Shown here piece by piece: positions 29,968-36,635 of a DNA stretch of 64,000 bases (position 1 is its first letter; every line of letters starts with the position of its first letter). Under the pieces are notes generated by a model that made no database searches, was not told the DNA's origin, and was given only the letters and a program-made list of their open reading frames with translations. Made by a program: the position numbers and the translations under genes. This stretch comes from Vitrella brassicaformis CCMP3155 (lineage: Eukaryota; Protista; Chromerida), in NCBI GenBank assembly GCA_001179505.1, contig CDMY01000592.1, positions 263,957 to 327,956 on the forward strand. The letters are read 5' to 3'.

Positions 29968-30453
29968 CTGACTACTTACAGCCGTAGACACACCTTTGGG
30001 GGGCAGGAGGGACAAGTGGATGGATGGCATGCGTGTGTTGGTAGCAGCCAGCTGTTAGTAGAGAAAGGTATGATGCATTGCGTTGAAACGTGCAATGCGT
30101 CCGGGTGTGTGTGTGTGTGTGTGTGAATGGGTGTGCACGATACATAATGGTGTGGTGTGGTGTGGATGCACCTGGCTGGCAGTTTGGACAATGGCGACTC
30201 GCTGATTCAATGCCTGGCAACATCAGTTTCCAAGTGATAGCCATGACACACGTCTTGAGATCTGGCGTCGGGACGCCTTTTTGGCTGGAGCCGTCCTGTC
30301 GCCCTCCAGGAAGTTCTAGGGCAAGATCTCCCCCGCCCTAGAGAAAAGCTAAGCTCGCAGACTCGAGGAGCAAGTGGTACCCACACGTGACCTTTGTCTG
30401 TTGGTGCTTTCCTCTCTCTCGTGTGGCGATGAGTTGATTTCAAGGACGAATCG

Positions 30454-32101
30454 ATGCAGCGGGCACGGTGGTATTACATCTACCCGCCTTTTAGGCGCTT
30501 CATCGTCGCTCACAGCATACCCAGGCCATCGACGGCGGCGTCGTCAGCATGCGGCTCTCCTGACATCGAGTCAACAGCCCGTCGGCCGTCTTGCCGCGGC
30601 TTCTCATCAACCACAGCAGCAGCAGCTTCACAATCACAGCCGGCACACCCCGAGTCGCTCATCGCGCAGACTCTCGAGGAGATGGCTGAAAACAAGGAGT
30701 ATCAGGCAACGCTTGACGACCTCAAGAAGTTTGGTCAGAAGCGGCTGTCGCTCGAGGAGAAGAAGAAGCGGCGGCGGGCGCTGCACCACCTGGGGCTGCC
30801 GGGGTTCGATGACTTCCTCCGGCAGAGGAACATCCCTCTGCTCAAGCGCGACACCGTCACCACCCTGCAGGTACTTACCTGCACGCAAGAACGGACAGGA
30901 CACATCACTATACTCTCTACTCTGCTGTGCCCATCAATTCCGTTTTCTCTTCGTGTGTGTCATGCCATTCAGGTGAACATCGGTCTGTACTGCAACCAGG
31001 CCTGCACTCACTGCCACGTGGAGGCGTCCCCCCTCCGCAAGGCCGACATGATGACGCCAGACATCGCGGCGCGGCTCATCGAGGTGCTCGACAACACCCC
31101 CACCGTCACCACACTCGACATCACCGGCGGCGCGCCGGAGATGAACCCCGTCTTTCGCACACTCGTCAAGGAGGGCCGCGCGCGCAACCTCGACGTCATC
31201 GACCGGTGCAACCTGACGGTGCTGCTCGAGCCCGGCCAGGAGGACCTCAGTGCCTTCCTGGCTGCCCACCAGGTGCACGTCATCGCCTCGCTGCCCTGCT
31301 ACAGCCAGAAGAATGTCGATTCGCAGAGGGGGCGGAAGGTGTTCGAGCGGTCCATCCAGGCGCTGCAGGAGCTCAACGGCAAGGGGTACGGCCGGCCGGG
31401 GACGTCCCTGGTGCTGGACCTGGTGTACAACCCTGGAGGGGCGTTCTTGCCACCCGACCAGGCGACGCTCGAGGCCAGGTACCGAGAGGAGCTTGAGCGC
31501 GACTACGGGATCGTATTCAACCGCCTGTACTGCATGACCAACATGCCGATAAAGCGGTTCGCCGACTTCCTGTACAAGCAGGGGAAGCTGGGCGAGTACA
31601 TGGAGCTGCTGGTCAACAACTTCAACCCCACCACGGTCGACACCGTCATGTGCAAGTCGCTCGTCAGCGTCAGATGGGACGGACGGTGAGTGAGCTGATG
31701 GGATGGGACCTGAGAAACCAACACGCACTTTGTGTGAATGTGTGTGTGTATGCAGCCTTCACGATTGTGACTTCAATCTGGCGCTAGACATGGACCTGCT
31801 CCCAGCAGACGGCGCCCCCTCCCAGAGTGACGAGGCGGACCGACCCCTCCCCCGGTCGGTGCTGTCATCTCCACCCCCCTCCTCCACCACACTGTGGGAC
31901 ATATCATCGCTCAATGACCTCGTCAACAGGTCAGCACGGGCGCCAAGGACACGGCAAGGCGGCAGATGGAGTGTGGATGTCTGTGTATTTCTGTGTGTGT
32001 GTGTCTTCAATCCAATCAGGCGTATAGCGAGTGACACGCACTGCTTCGGCTGCACGGCTGGTGCCGGGAGCTCTTGACAGGGGGAGACCGTGAAGAGCTA
32101 G
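30454..32101 (+). CDS. arsS: Radical SAM ArsS-family enzyme (arsenosugar biosynthesis, DUF3641 C-terminus); candidate selenoprotein with in-frame TGA at 32075-32077
   Basis: LQVNIGLYCNQACTHCHVEASP (CxxxCxxC), LDITGGAPEMNP, DRCNLTVL, ASLPCY, LVYNPGGAFLPP, MCKSLVSVRWDGRLHDCDFN, and HCFGCTAGAGSS-TGA-QGETVKS-TAG. Introns at about 30871-30971, 31685-31754 and 31930-32019. Confidence 0.9.
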
Positions 32102-33768
32102 ACACACACGGTGCGGCCCTTCACGGTGGGGTGCTTGGGAATCTCGTGGATCCACACATGCCTAGAGAGGGGAGGGGAGAGGGGAGGTCTGCACCATCCA
32201 TCATGACGTGGTGGCGTGGTCTGCGTGTGTGTCATTGTTTCGTGCCCGCGAGTGAGTCTGCCCCTCATCACCCCAGGCAGCTGGGATGGGGGCGGGTGAT
32301 AGCAGGGAGGCGACGGACACACACTCACGCCACGGCCACGTACACAACCAGATGGATCCATCGCATCATTGCGGCGGACAGGAAGGCAGGGAATGGGCGA
32401 GCGGTTTTGCGAGGGGGTCATCACTGGTTCACTGGTGTGACAGACAGTCATTTTGGCATCTTGCATGGTCATCCGTGCGTTGACATCGCATTCGTCATGA
32501 AGATTCTGTATCTTACCTGGTTCACATCTCGGCCGGCCATATCAACCGCCACAGGCGAAGGGCGCCATGTCCGTTGGACAACCAACTGGTGCCACGGTGC
32601 CCTTCCAGAGTGGTGATGTTTGTGGCCGGCCGGGGAAACCGGGCTTTCACTGGATGGATGGATGGATGCTTGTTGCGTCAGCTTTTGAGTTTGTTGGGCT
32701 GGCTGGCTGTACACACGAATTGAATGAGTGCGTTCGTATCATACATACGGATCACGATATCACTGTACGCGTGTGTGTCGACGAATGGACTGTCCCAAAA
32801 GAGAGAGTGTGTCCTTGTGTGCGTGACGTTATCAGCCGTTCAAGACTGCAAGGCATCTCTTTTTCATTTTATTTTTCACGACTGCATGGTGCGGGTGAGG
32901 GTTTAAATTGTGTGTGTGAATCTATAAGTATGGCTCGAGAGGGGTCATCCGGGGAGACACTACTGCAATCTGTCTATCTGTCTGTCAGTACAAGGGGGGA
33001 GGGAGCTCACAGACAGCACGTGCGTGTCCTAGCGTGTCGCTTGTACACAGACCCCATCCATGCCGGGATGAAGAGACGAACTGACTATGAGGTAGTGTCC
33101 AAAGTGACGAATTTCCGTGAAATGTGTTGGATTCGAAACCTCTGTTCTACCTGTTCTGCCTCGCGCCGCGCCATGTGTGGGAAGTACTTCCCCCGGTAGG
33201 TCTGCCCTGCCAGTGGCAGCTGAAGATCTTTCCTGTTGGCTGTTGACAGCGACGCGCTCGACGACACCGATGCCCTCCCGGCATCAGCAACAGCTCCACC
33301 ATGAAGACCTGTCACCGATCTGCTGGACTGCCTGACGCACCACCACCAACGCCAATGGCACCACCTTCAACCACCAATGACGGCCGCTTCGCTGTTTCCG
33401 ACCACCCGCCGCCGCCTGTTGGCGACCAGGGCCCCAGCCCAAGCGCCTCTGCCTGTGTGCACGATGATGGTGATATGGATGCGGATGAGGAGGTCGGCAG
33501 ACGGCTCCCTGGCAAGCACCTGGTGATGGATCTTGCGGCCGTGGTGTGAGGGAAGCGGCGCCAGATGAGGCTCTATCTCCCGGGCGTGGTCAAGATGCGC
33601 TTCTGTTGGGCCCTCCTGTGTAGGAGAGACAAGAAAAAGCAAACAAGGAGGGAGGGAGGGAGGGAGTGCATCATTGCCAACCAAATGGTTTGTTTGTTGT
33701 GTTTAGGTTCCTCTCTTCGAAACTTGCGGCATTTTCCGGCTGTGATGCGAGATCCAGGGCACTTGCAC

Positions 33769-36635
33769 ATGCCGACGATGACGCCCCGCTTGGTGCTCCT
33801 GCTGGCTGCATGTTTAGTGGCATGCACGTGCGTGTCGGGTCAGAAGGTGAGCGTGACGGAAGTGTCGGTGGACAGCGCTGTGGAGGACATCAAGTGGGGC
33901 GGTGCGGATCACAGCGTGGTGCTTCTCAAGACGATCAAGGGACGGCTGTACCGCAGCACCGACTCGGGCAAGCAATGGTACGACATTACCAACAGCCTCG
34001 TCCTGTCCGAGACAGAGCCTGGTGCGCCAGCCACGGCCATCACCGTCGACAGCATGCTAATCAACCCCGTCGACAAGAACATTGTGCTCGTCGTCGGCAC
34101 CAAACACAGCCACTTCATCTCCAACGACGCGGGACGCACCTGGAGGAGACTCAAGCAGCGGGTGCCGATCCACTCGTGGCAGTTCCACCCCACCCAGCCG
34201 CACTGGGCGCTGCTGAGCGCGTGGAGTGACCAGTGCCACACGGCGAGCGAGCCGGCCAAGACGGCTGCCGGAGGTGCGGTGACGGACAAGGCGTGCAACC
34301 ACATGCTGTATGTGACCAAGGATCTGGGTGTGTACTTCCACCTCGTGTCGAGCTACGTGGTTCAGTTCTCGTAGGGCGACGTCAAGCACAACCAGCAGAA
34401 CTGGATCTACTTCACCCACCACCGCACCAAGGAGGGCGGTCAGCCCAAGTACGGCGGCTAGACGAAGAACGTCGACTTCGCCGTCACCGAGGACTTCGGC
34501 CGCTCCCACCGGGTCCTCATCCACCATACCAACAAGTTCCTCATCTCTAATGGGTACACCTTTGTGACCAAGTCGGAGGACGAGGCCAAGCAGACGGTCG
34601 CTCTGATGGTCTCAACCGACGGCGGCAAGACCTTCGAGAAGGCCAAGCTGCCCTTCGAGCTGTCCGAGAAGTCCTACACGGTCCTGGACACATCTGAGGG
34701 GGCCGTGATGCTGCACGTCAACCACGGCGACGAGGGCCGCTCGGGCAGCGGCGACGTGTACATCTCTGACCACAAGGGCCTCAGGTACTCCCTCTCTCTC
34801 CCCAGCAACGTCCGCACCACCACAGGCGAGACCGAATTCGACCGCGTTCTCTCACTCGAGGGCGTGTATCTGGCCAATTTCAAGGACGACCCAGAGGCCG
34901 AGGGCGCGCTGTTTACTGCGGCGGTCGAGAAGAAGACCGAGGACAAGGCGGCCGAGCATCAGGAGGAGGAGGTCAGCCAGACGGCGGTCTACTAGCGGCA
35001 CAAACCCAAGCGGCGGTCGAACGCCGAGGATGTCGTCAAAACGGTCATCTCGTTCGAGAAGGGGGCCGTGTGGTCGTACCTGAGGGCGCCCAAAATCGAT
35101 TCCATCGGCAAGAGGATCGAGTGCCCCCCCCCACAGATGCTGGCTGCACCTACATGGTGTGGCGAATTTCCACAACTACGCGCCCTTCTACTCGGTGGAG
35201 AACGCCGTGGGCATCATCATGGGCACGGGCAACGTGGGCCCCCACCTGCGATACGAGGCCGACGAAGTCAACACCTACCTCTCGCGCGACGGCGGGCTCT
35301 CGTGGGTGGAAGCCCACAAGGGCGCCTTCATCTACGAGTTCGGCGACCACGGGGGGCTGATCGTCATGGCCGACGACCTGCACAAGACCAACCAGGTGGT
35401 CTTCTCGTGGAACGAGGGCCAGTCCTGGTACGACTTCGAGCTGGGCACCTACCCTGTGGAGGTCGACAATGTGGTCATCGAGCCCAACTCGTCGAGCGTC
35501 GAGTTCCTCCTCTACGGCACCAGGGGGGACAACGGCGTGGTCTACCACCTGGACTTCAACGCGCTGGGGCAGCCTGCGTGTCAGGGGGTATATGCCGCCG
35601 ACTCTGTGTCCTCCGACTATGAGACCTGGACGCCCTCTGACGGGCGGTCGACGGAAACGTGCATACTCGGTCAGTGAGTGAATGAGGCAGATAGACAACA
35701 CACACAACAGAGGGCATGTTCTCTCTCTCTCTCTCTCTGTGCGTGTGTGCCTGAGTGCAGGTCGTCAGCTGACGTACACGCGCCGCAAGCAGACGTCCGA
35801 GTGCTTCAACGGCCGGGATTTCTCCCGCCCCCTGGCGCGCAAGAACTGTGTCTGCACCGAGGAGGACTACGAGTGCGAGTTTGGCTTCACGCGCAAGATC
35901 GGCTCACTCGAGTGCCAGCCGGAGGACCCCAAGCTCACCGCCCCTCACTGCACCTCCGGCAACTTCTTCTACATGGACGCCTACCGACGAGTGCCCGGGG
36001 ACACGTGCGAGGGCGGCTGGGCGCCCCAGAAGGTGGCGGTGCCGTGCCCACACAACTCGCCCTTCAGCCGCGGGGCATACAGCGTCCTCTTGGTGCTCTT
36101 CCTCTTGTGTGTCCTGCTGGGCGGCATCACCTTCCTCTCCAAGACCGATCGGCTCAAGGGCCTCCCAGCGATCTCCTTCCTCAGCCAGGCGGGCTTCGAC
36201 ACCTTCGGGGGCGTCAAGTACGCTCGGCTGGGCAAGGGCAGCCACCGGGACGACGACCACCACGACATGGGCTTCATCGACAACGAACACGACGCATACG
36301 AGGAGGACGCCCCCAGCCTCATGACATACACCACAACCGAGTCGCGGCATCGGCTCAATGTCAACCACCACGCACACGACGAAGACGAGCACGAGACGAC
36401 CACACACATGAATGCGAAGCGGGAGGGGGAGGGGCTGGCCGATGACGACACCAACCGGCAGCAGCAGCAGGAGTCGTTGATGGATCTGGAGGGCGGGGGC
36501 GGGGCGGGGGGTGCGACAGAGGGTGAGAGGCGGGTGGCCAAGAGGGCGGCGCTCGAGGCGGCCACCGAGGAGGTACCCAAGTTAGCTCCACCAGCCAATA
36601 GCAAAGGCGGCGCCACAGGCAGCGAACTCATATGA
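33769..36635 (+). pseudogene. SORTLR: Sortilin/VPS10 receptor (TgSORTLR-like) with disrupted reading frame: pseudogene or recoded gene
   Basis: Signal peptide, BNR repeats (YRSTDSGKQW, STDGGKTF, LSRDGGLSW), 10CC module, TM helix and a tail ending ELI. In-frame TAGs at 34372-34374, 34459-34461 and 34993-34995, and a +1 frameshift in the C9 run at 35124-35132. Confidence 0.85.

What the first reader, a model, noticed from the sequence alone, without database searches (positions are those of the whole stretch)
32020..32101. In-frame UGA at the Cys/Sec site of a eukaryotic ArsS radical SAM enzyme: candidate selenoprotein
Seen: the last exon reads HCFGCTAGAGSS-TGA-CAG-GGG-GAG-ACC-GTG-AAG-AGC-TAG. 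Known: the ArsS (radical SAM/Cys-rich, DUF3641) family ends in HCxGCTAGxGSS-C/U-GG, and some bacterial members carry selenocysteine there. Inference: TGA 32075-32077 encodes Sec and the protein ends ...GSSUQGETVKS. Automated models would truncate it at GSS, so a Sec-dependent arsenic-adenosylating enzyme in a photosynthetic relative of apicomplexans could be overlooked.
Basis: partly seen in the sequence, partly recalled or inferred. Interest (0 to 1): 0.9.

Follow-up and report, generated by a model that had tools for sequence, protein, structure and literature searches.

The report
Hidden selenocysteine in Vitrella arsenosugar enzyme
The TGA near the end of this Vitrella brassicaformis gene for the arsenic-adenosylating radical SAM enzyme ArsS almost certainly encodes selenocysteine, so the public protein model is eight residues short and lacks its conserved C-terminal Cys/Sec residue; this is a new eukaryotic member of a family already known to include selenoproteins.

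Summary

- **Gene:** a four-exon ArsS gene (NCBIfam TIGR04167, 346 bits against a cut-off of 300).
- **TGA is real:** TGA 32075-77 is present in genomic contigs and in spliced mRNA contigs, with no splice that bypasses it.
- **Public model is truncated:** CEM25174.1 / A0A0G4G9C3 (453 aa) stops at ...GSS.
- **Position matches Cys in homologs:** Cys-type homologs read GSS-C-[QGS]-G-A-[TL]-x-stop.
- **Other TGA copies:** 14 other eukaryote-like loci carry TGA there, followed by Q-G-x-T/V-A/V-stop with synonymous codon variation. Vitrella reads U-QGETVKS-stop.
- **Truncation is widespread:** 44 of the 108 nearest database homologs end exactly at GSS.
- **SECIS:** the 1-kb unspliced 3' UTR holds one SECIS-like hairpin (32252-32300). 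It has a perfect UGA/GA quartet and the same type II architecture as the homologs' SECIS elements. No dinucleotide shuffle (0 of 400) matched it.
- **SECIS is non-canonical:** it has a GUGA core and CAC where AA is expected.

The Sec machinery of the genome could not be tested here, and selenium incorporation is unproven. Bacterial ArsS selenoproteins are already known, so this is a new member of a known kind. The same stretch was also noted in an overlapping window of this genome (s1-218453), not on other DNA.

The parts
30364..30453 (+). 5' UTR (transcript contig starts at 30364 or earlier); contains a 2-codon uORF ATG AGT TGA at 30429-30437
   Evidence: L001 maps to 30364-30872 at 100% identity; sequence read
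30454..30870 (+). Coding exon 1. It begins at the ATG used by the public model and encodes a 76-aa N-terminal extension that looks like an organelle presequence, followed by the conserved SLIxxTLEEM region.
   Evidence: P0121 (CEM25174.1) starts MQRARW...; exon 1/2 junction shown by the RNA contig joint 30870/30973
30871..30972 (+). Intron 1 (102 nt, GT..AG, in frame)
30973..31685 (+). Coding exon 2: radical SAM core and the first part of DUF3641
   Evidence: TIGR04167 346.2 bits (cut-off 300); PF04055 and PF12345
30991..31014 (+). CX3CX2C radical SAM cluster motif (CNQACTHC)
   Evidence: Sequence; C70, C74 and C77 are invariant in alignment A1
31686..31755 (+). Intron 2 (70 nt, GT..AG)
   Evidence: Joint seen in RNA runs X1 and X2
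31756..31929 (+). Coding exon 3 (DCDFN motif and a low-complexity linker)
31930..32019 (+). Intron 3 (90 nt, GT..AG)
   Evidence: X1 record 2 joins about 31929 to 32020
32020..32074 (+). Start of the last exon, encoding RIASDTHCFGCTAGAGSS (the conserved HCxGCTAGxGSS motif lies at 32039-32074)
32075..32077 (+). In-frame TGA, the proposed selenocysteine codon (residue 454 of a 461-aa protein)
   Evidence: Aligned with Cys in 66 loci and with TGA in 14 other loci; present in both DNA and RNA contigs
32078..32098 (+). Seven codons after the TGA: QGETVKS
   Evidence: Matches the tails of homologs: Q 13/14 and G 14/14 in Sec forms; Cys-form P0096 ends ...CQGATVKT
32099..32101 (+). TAG, the true stop codon
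32102..33144 (+). Unspliced 3' UTR (at least 1043 nt)
   Evidence: L001 maps collinearly to 32013-33144; X1 record 3 covers 32161-33117
32245..32306 (+). SECIS-like element. 5' core GUGA at 32252-55 and 3' core UGAU at 32297-32300. Helix II at 32257-68 / 32286-96 (11 pairs, one bulged U). Unpaired CAC at 32269-71. Five-bp mini-stem at 32272-76 / 32281-85 with a GCAG loop. Helix I continues outward to 32225-32324.
   Evidence: MFE fold with z = -3.5 and 0 of 200 shuffles as stable. It is the only candidate in the UTR. 0 of 400 shuffled UTRs gave one as good. It has the same architecture as the SECIS elements of Sec-type homologs.

Best explanation
This is the Vitrella brassicaformis ortholog of ArsS. 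ArsS is the radical SAM enzyme that transfers a 5'-deoxyadenosyl group from SAM to dimethylarsenite, the first committed step of arsenosugar synthesis. UGA 32075-77 is decoded as selenocysteine by the eukaryotic recoding route: a SECIS hairpin in the 3' UTR, 177 nt downstream, recruits the Sec-specific factors. Translation then continues for seven more codons to UAG and gives a 461-aa protein ending ...HCFGCTAGAGSS-U-QGETVKS.

Shown here:
- gene identity and exon structure;
- the UGA in DNA and in mRNA;
- Cys/UGA equivalence across homologs;
- coding conservation after the UGA;
- a SECIS-shaped hairpin.

Inferred:
- that the hairpin functions although it has GUGA and CAC in place of AUGA and AA;
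- that Vitrella has the Sec machinery;
- that the Sec residue, like the Cys it replaces, acts in the C-terminal Cys-rich domain. It could bind the trivalent arsenic substrate, or work at or beside an auxiliary Fe-S cluster of a twitch/SPASM-like domain.
For: - **Family:** TIGR04167 scores 346.2 bits on exon 2 alone (cut-off 300). The last exon matches profile positions 280-298 of 303. PF04055 and PF12345 both hit.
- **UGA is real:** spliced mRNA contigs and DNA contigs carry it, and no joint bypasses it.
- **Cys/Sec equivalence:** of 81 loci with the motif, 66 have TGC/TGT and 15 have TGA at this codon.
- **Coding after the UGA:** all 14 non-Vitrella TGA loci continue Q/T-G-x-T/V-A/V and then stop after 5-7 codons. 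Codon use varies synonymously (CAG/CAA, GGA/GGC/GGG/GGT, ACC/ACA/ACG, GCC/GCA/GCG/GCT).
- **Database truncation:** 44 of 108 nearest database homologs end exactly at GSS, including named haptophyte and diatom proteins.
- **Phylogeny:** the Sec/Cys state is phylogenetically clustered, with 6 changes against 34 in shuffles.
- **SECIS:** there is one candidate in the UTR, with quartet U.U, G.A, A.G, G.U, an 11-layer helix II and a mini-stem. 0 of 400 dinucleotide shuffles were as good and 25 of 400 gave any candidate. Only two compact [A/G]UGA candidates occur in 128 kb of window sequence counting both strands. Homologs' SECIS elements have the same layout.
- **Literature:** TIGR04167 is listed as a prokaryotic selenoprotein with a GxxU motif (PMC13188914). 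ArsS makes DDMAA from DMAs(III) (PMC13598754).
Against: - The SECIS candidate lacks the conserved unpaired AA (it has CAC) and has G, not A, before UGA.
- No Rfam SECIS model hit it, although that search also missed the canonical SECIS elements of homologs.
- A model built from one homolog's SECIS did not find it either.
- tRNA-Sec, SPS2, PSTK, SepSecS, eEFSec and SBP2 were not examined. The window has no tRNA gene, and earlier notes on this genome mention none.
- There are no protein-level data.
- A recent TGC/TGT-to-TGA nonsense change would also leave the downstream codons looking conserved.
Confidence: 0.85

Rival explanations
1. The TGA is a genuine stop. The protein ends at ...GSS, either as a recent nonsense mutation of a Cys codon (an enzyme crippled or altered at its C-terminus) or as a tolerated truncation.
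For: One base separates TGC/TGT from TGA. A recent change would leave downstream codons intact. The SECIS candidate is non-canonical. The public annotation uses this stop. A premature stop in the last exon would not trigger mRNA decay, so expression does not argue against it.
Against: The same TGA with the same conserved tail occurs in 14 other independent loci and is implied in 44 of 108 nearest homologs, so Sec is a normal state of this family. A SECIS-shaped hairpin that no shuffle of 400 equals lies in the UTR. The Cys/Sec position is filled by Cys or TGA in all 81 loci that carry the motif.
Confidence: 0.09
2. The UGA is read through by a near-cognate tRNA (Cys, Trp or Arg) without selenium. 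The extended protein is made but is not a selenoprotein.
For: It would also explain conservation of the tail. Nothing here measures which residue is inserted.
Against: It does not explain the SECIS-like hairpin, nor why homologs pair this TGA with canonical AUGA/AA SECIS elements. Programmed read-through at this efficiency is not known for such a context (background knowledge).
Confidence: 0.04
3. The TGA is a sequencing, assembly or gene-model artefact, for example a missed intron that joins GSS to a Cys-encoding exon.
For: None found.
Against: Two DNA runs and two RNA assemblies agree base for base. RNA contigs run unspliced from 32017 to 33117-33144.
Confidence: 0.01

Closest known systems
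Bacterial ArsS / 'radical SAM domain protein' selenoprotein (NCBIfam TIGR04167 rSAM_SeCys; example AAR34688.1 listed in PMC13188914)
   Same: Same family by profile score. Same radical SAM plus DUF3641 architecture. Sec sits at the same C-terminal GxxU position.
   Different: Bacterial Sec insertion uses a SECIS immediately downstream of the UGA inside the coding region, together with SelB. Here the UGA is seven codons from the stop, and the candidate SECIS is a eukaryotic kink-turn hairpin 177 nt downstream in the 3' UTR. The gene has three introns and an N-terminal presequence.
Cys-type ArsS, biochemically characterised (adenosylation of DMAs(III) to 5'-deoxy-5'-dimethylarsinoyladenosine; PMC13598754, bioRxiv 10.1101/2024.02.01.577332)
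   Same: Orthologous family. All conserved Cys positions are present, so the same reaction is expected.
   Different: Cys instead of Sec at the C-terminal position. The activity of the Vitrella enzyme is untested.
Sec-type ArsS of marine protists (haptophyte and diatom transcripts such as P0037 Haptolina, P0116/P0137 Scyphosphaera, P0088 Pseudo-nitzschia; metatranscriptome loci L002-L008 and others)
   Same: TGA at the same codon, a U-Q-G-x-T-x tail, and a type II SECIS 80-180 nt after the TGA.
   Different: Those SECIS elements are canonical (AUGA core; AAAU/ACAA/GCAA/UCAA unpaired). Vitrella has GUGA and CAC. Vitrella branches on its own, outside the large all-Sec clade.
'Fe-S oxidoreductase' (FeSoxR) selenoprotein listed for Aureococcus and in the algal selenoproteome survey (PMC5917014, PMC7539508)
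   Same: It may be this very family. UniRef names the Klebsormidium ArsS homolog 'Fe-S oxidoreductase'.
   Different: I could not verify that they are the same family: neither the text nor the held supplement gives a sequence or motif. Chromerids are not in that survey.
Twitch/SPASM-type radical SAM enzymes with solved structures (SkfB 6efn, BlsE 7vob, SuiB 5v1q, MoaA 1tv7, anSME 4k36)
   Same: These are the best structural matches of the AlphaFold model (Foldseek E 5e-9 to 1e-6): a radical SAM barrel followed by a Cys-rich C-terminal domain.
   Different: Only 13-18% identity and TM about 0.4-0.46. No ArsS structure exists. The role of the C-terminal Cys/Sec is unknown.

Membership tests
ArsS (NCBIfam TIGR04167, arsenosugar biosynthesis radical SAM (seleno)protein) | Score above the curated equivalog cut-off (300 bits) | tested here: met
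   346.2 bits, E 1.5e-103, on exon 2 alone (profile 8-247). The last exon adds profile positions 280-298.
ArsS (NCBIfam TIGR04167, arsenosugar biosynthesis radical SAM (seleno)protein) | CX3CX2C radical SAM cluster motif | tested here: met
   CNQACTHC at 30991-31014. These Cys are invariant in A1. PF04055 E 3e-10.
ArsS (NCBIfam TIGR04167, arsenosugar biosynthesis radical SAM (seleno)protein) | C-terminal Cys-rich DUF3641 domain ending HCxGCTAGxGSS-[C/U]-x-G | tested here: met
   PF12345 E 3.6e-30 and 3.7e-06 on the two pieces. The motif and tail were compared with 120 proteins and 80 loci.
ArsS (NCBIfam TIGR04167, arsenosugar biosynthesis radical SAM (seleno)protein) | Catalyses 5'-deoxyadenosylation of dimethylarsenite | not testable with these tools
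   Known for characterised ArsS (PMC13598754). Inferred here by orthology only.
Eukaryotic selenoprotein (SECIS-dependent UGA recoding) | In-frame UGA aligned with Cys (or Sec) of homologs | tested here: met
   66 loci have TGC/TGT and 15 have TGA at the same codon.
Eukaryotic selenoprotein (SECIS-dependent UGA recoding) | Coding conservation downstream of the UGA | tested here: met
   U-QGETVKS-stop against consensus U-Q-G-[TAV]-[TV]-[AV]-stop, with synonymous codon variation among 14 loci.
Eukaryotic selenoprotein (SECIS-dependent UGA recoding) | SECIS in the 3' UTR: UGA/GA non-Watson-Crick quartet, helix II of about 11-12 layers, apical loop or mini-stem | tested here: met
   32252-32300: U.U, G.A, A.G, G.U quartet, 11 layers, 5-bp mini-stem. 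It is unique in the UTR and 0 of 400 shuffles were as good.
Eukaryotic selenoprotein (SECIS-dependent UGA recoding) | Canonical AUGA core and unpaired AA(R) before the apical stem or loop | tested here: not met
   GUGA and CAC. Homologs have AUGA plus AAAU/ACAA/GCAA/UCAA. Variants of both positions are known in accepted SECIS elements (background knowledge; for example CC in SelM/SelO). This lowers certainty but does not exclude function.
Eukaryotic selenoprotein (SECIS-dependent UGA recoding) | Genome encodes tRNA-Sec, SPS2, PSTK, SepSecS, eEFSec and SBP2 | not tested
   Only this 64-kb window is readable and it has no tRNA gene. Earlier unchecked notes list many other candidate selenoprotein genes in this genome, but none on the machinery.
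Eukaryotic selenoprotein (SECIS-dependent UGA recoding) | Selenium found in the protein | not testable with these tools
   Needs 75Se labelling or mass spectrometry.

The most novel reading that the evidence does not exclude
Sec-type ArsS may be a widespread eukaryotic selenoprotein family that has never been explicitly described. It occurs in haptophytes, diatoms, chromerids and many uncultured marine protists, is truncated at GSS throughout the public databases, and makes arsenic detoxification or arsenosugar synthesis in marine phytoplankton depend on selenium supply. In chromerids it would be served by a divergent SECIS class (GUGA core, no apical AA), which implies a relaxed or altered SBP2 specificity.
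Probability: 0.35. Interest if true: 0.6.

Novelty: new member of a known kind. Interest (0 to 1): 0.42.

Why it matters
- **Annotation:** the public Vitrella protein (and, by the same error, roughly 40% of its nearest database relatives) lacks the conserved C-terminal Cys/Sec residue and tail. Any structural or functional inference from those entries is therefore made on a truncated enzyme.
- **Biology:** a selenium-containing residue in an enzyme that handles trivalent arsenic links two trace-element cycles in marine algae. It predicts that arsenosugar production depends on selenium availability.
- **Chromerids:** I found no published selenoproteome for them, so this is one concrete, testable selenoprotein.
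- **SECIS:** its unusual SECIS is a useful test case for SECIS-finding tools, which are tuned on animal sequences.

Tried and rejected
- **Rfam cmscan, E up to 10, on 31900-34000:** no SECIS hit. The same search on homolog transcripts with canonical AUGA/AAA SECIS elements also found nothing. The negative result is therefore uninformative.
- **Covariance model from one homolog SECIS (R1):**
  - With default filters it found nothing relevant.
  - With filters off it recovered only two of the homologs' SECIS elements (L005 E 0.012, L006 E 2.5) and not Vitrella's. The model is too sequence-specific to be used as evidence either way.
- **MAFFT alignments of SECIS elements (A2, A5):** the 3' arms were misaligned, so no multi-sequence model could be built.
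- **Other UTR hairpins:**
  - The ATGA at 32203 and the ATGA at 32725 do not form a helix II (by-eye reading; neither appears as a valid candidate).
  - The GTGA at 32613 reached only 7 helix II layers, and only as a long multi-branched fold to a GA 108 nt away.
- **'Fe-S oxidoreductase' identity:** I tried to establish whether the algal 'Fe-S oxidoreductase' selenoprotein is this family and could not. The prokaryotic 'Fe-S oxidoreductase' selenoprotein is GlpC, a different family.
- **Sec machinery:** searches of earlier notes for it found nothing. Literature searches for chromerid selenoproteins found nothing relevant.
- **Bacterial promoter/terminator scan:** irrelevant to a eukaryotic 3' end.

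Full report
**What is there.**
- The stretch is the last exon of a four-exon gene.
- A 2519-nt transcript contig from a public transcriptome (L001) aligns at 99.9-100% identity to 30364-30872, 30970-31685, 31755-31930 and 32013-33144.
- With GT..AG boundaries the coding exons are 30454-30870, 30973-31685, 31756-31929 and 32020-32101.
- Logan contigs of an RNA run (X1) show the same three joints and run unspliced across the TGA (32017-32186) and through the UTR (32161-33117).
- Contigs of two other runs that carry the introns (X3, X5) cover 30300-33373 without a single difference.
- The TGA is therefore real in both DNA and RNA, and no splice bypasses it.

**Organism and public annotation.** The exact protein up to the TGA is in the databases as CEM25174.1 / UniRef100_A0A0G4G9C3, 'Radical SAM core domain-containing protein', Vitrella brassicaformis CCMP3155, 453 aa, ending ...HCFGCTAGAGSS.

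**Gene identity.**
- Exon 2 alone scores 346.2 bits (E 1.5e-103) against NCBIfam TIGR04167, 'arsenosugar biosynthesis radical SAM (seleno)protein ArsS'. The curated cut-off is 300.
- The last exon matches profile positions 280-298 of 303.
- Pfam finds Radical_SAM and DUF3641.
- The CX3CX2C motif (CNQACTHC) and six further Cys are invariant among 20 aligned homologs.
- ArsS adenosylates dimethylarsenite to 5'-deoxy-5'-dimethylarsinoyladenosine by a radical mechanism (PMC13598754; bioRxiv 10.1101/2024.02.01.577332).
- No ArsS structure exists.
- An AlphaFold model (pLDDT 77.8) is nearest to radical SAM enzymes with C-terminal twitch/SPASM auxiliary-cluster domains, namely SkfB, ChlB, BlsE, SuiB, MoaA and anSME, at TM about 0.4-0.46.

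**Comparative test of the TGA.**
- Among the 120 best database homologs, Cys forms end GSS-C-Q-G-A-T-x or GSS-C-[GS]-G-A-[LT]-x, while a large group ends abruptly at GSS. After removing duplicates and fragments this is 44 'Sec-type' against 64 Cys-type of 108.
- DNA for 84 loci was fetched. Of the 81 that carry the motif, 52 have TGC, 14 TGT and 15 TGA at this codon.
- All 14 non-Vitrella TGA loci continue in frame with Q (13/14), G (14/14), T/A/V, T/V, A/V and then stop after 5-7 codons. This is the tail length and composition of the Cys forms.
- The codons differ synonymously between loci (CAG/CAA; GGA/GGC/GGG/GGT; ACC/ACA/ACG; GCC/GCA/GCG/GCT). That pattern is the signature of translated sequence under purifying selection.
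- Vitrella reads U-Q-G-E-T-V-K-S-stop. The Cys-type P0096 ends C-Q-G-A-T-V-K-T.
- On a tree built without the tail, the Sec/Cys state is strongly clustered: 6 changes against a shuffled mean of 34. There is a large all-Sec clade that includes named haptophytes, and a diatom Sec clade. Vitrella sits on its own branch.

**SECIS.**
- Rfam finds no SECIS in 31900-34000 at E up to 10. The same search also misses the plainly canonical elements of homolog transcripts, so that negative carries no weight.
- I wrote a pattern-plus-folding scanner. It requires NUGA, then GA 30-105 nt on, a forced first helix II pair, 8 or more helix layers, and a helix I energy.
- On homologs it returns one element each, with AUGA cores and unpaired AAAU, ACAA, GCAA or UCAA before a mini-stem, 80-180 nt after the TGA.
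- On the Vitrella UTR it returns exactly one element: 5' GUGA 32252-55 and 3' UGAU 32297-32300.
  - This gives the quartet U.U, G.A, A.G, G.U.
  - Helix II has 8+3 pairs with one bulged U.
  - CAC is unpaired.
  - A 5-bp mini-stem carries a GCAG loop.
  - A long helix I reaches out to 32225-32324.
- The unconstrained MFE fold gives the same shape, with z = -3.5 and 0 of 200 shuffles as stable.
- Of 400 dinucleotide shuffles of the UTR, 25 gave any candidate passing the filters and none gave one as stable.
- Scanning all 128 kb of the window (both strands) gives only two compact [A/G]UGA candidates. One is this element; the other lies antisense within the ArsS coding exon.
- The element lies 177 nt after the UGA, which is adequate spacing by general knowledge of eukaryotic SECIS function.
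- Its weaknesses are the G before UGA and the lack of the AA motif. Only one A remains, in CAC, where homologs have CAA or AAA.
- Earlier unchecked notes on this genome report several GUGA-core SECIS candidates, one of them with CC instead of AA. I could not test those.

**What could not be tested.**
- Selenium in the protein.
- Enzyme activity.
- I found no paper on chromerid selenoproteins in the held library.

**Comparison with what is known.**
- TIGR04167 is already catalogued as a prokaryotic selenoprotein family ('Radical SAM domain protein', GxxU; PMC13188914; also listed in PMC1976440).
- For eukaryotes, algal selenoproteome surveys list an 'FeS oxidoreductase' family (PMC7539508; Aureococcus, PMC5917014). 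It may be this family, but I could not confirm that.
- The prokaryotic family of that name is GlpC and is different.
- Chromerids are absent from the algal survey.
- I therefore file this as a new (eukaryotic, chromerid) member of a known kind, with a non-canonical SECIS as its one unusual trait.

**Verdict.** The main rival is a recent nonsense allele or a tolerated truncation (about 0.09). Interest is moderate. It is a clean annotation correction that extends to many marine protist entries, and it suggests a selenium-arsenic link, but it is not a new kind of system.

Noticed in passing
Proteins P0002-P0117; loci L002-L008, L012, L013, L018, L020, L022, L038, L058: About 40% (44 of 108) of the nearest database homologs of this ArsS are truncated exactly at ...CTAGxGSS. 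They include named haptophyte (Haptolina, Scyphosphaera) and diatom (Pseudo-nitzschia) entries. All 14 such loci whose DNA was fetched have TGA followed by a conserved QG-x-T-A tail.
   Followed up: yes
L021:1151-1190: An ArsS homolog from an organism that reads TAA/TAG as Gln. It has seven in-frame TAA/TAG codons at positions conserved as Q or similar, including C-TAG-GATA where relatives have CQGATA, and TGA is its real stop.
   Followed up: partly
window 30454-30681: The public model's 76-aa N-terminal extension (MQRARWYYIYPPFRRF..., rich in R/S/A) precedes the conserved SLIxxTLEEM block. Homologs carry similar variable presequences, so eukaryotic ArsS may be targeted to an organelle.
   Followed up: no
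window 30429-30437: A two-codon upstream ORF (ATG AGT TGA) lies in the 5' UTR, 17 nt before the main ATG.
   Followed up: no
window 32651-32668, 31731-31755 and 32969-32986: Short (GGAT)n, (TG)n and (CTGT)n-like microsatellites show many-fold excess contig depth and many loose ends in the DNA runs, so they are dispersed simple repeats of this genome. One of them lies inside the ArsS 3' UTR.
   Followed up: no
window 33381, 33392, 33431, 33468, 33477: Single-base differences between runs, some seen only in run X2 (labelled as a different organism code). They point to strain-level polymorphism in the intergenic region or the start of the next gene.
   Followed up: no
window 33619-33707: An 87-nt GT..AG intron joint seen in RNA run X1 belongs to the downstream + strand gene (ORF from 33565; another reader noted a sortilin-like gene at 34372-35124).
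   Followed up: no
L002:1672-1722, L004:1447-1496, L005:1609-1655 (controls): Rfam release 15 cmscan at E up to 10 failed to report the canonical AUGA/AA SECIS elements in the two protist ArsS transcripts submitted to it (L002, L004). A negative Rfam result should therefore not be read as absence of a SECIS in protist UTRs.
   Followed up: yes
P0034 versus P0040: A closely related Cys/Sec pair (branch lengths 0.013 and 0.15) shows that Sec and Cys interconvert over short evolutionary distances in this family.
   Followed up: no
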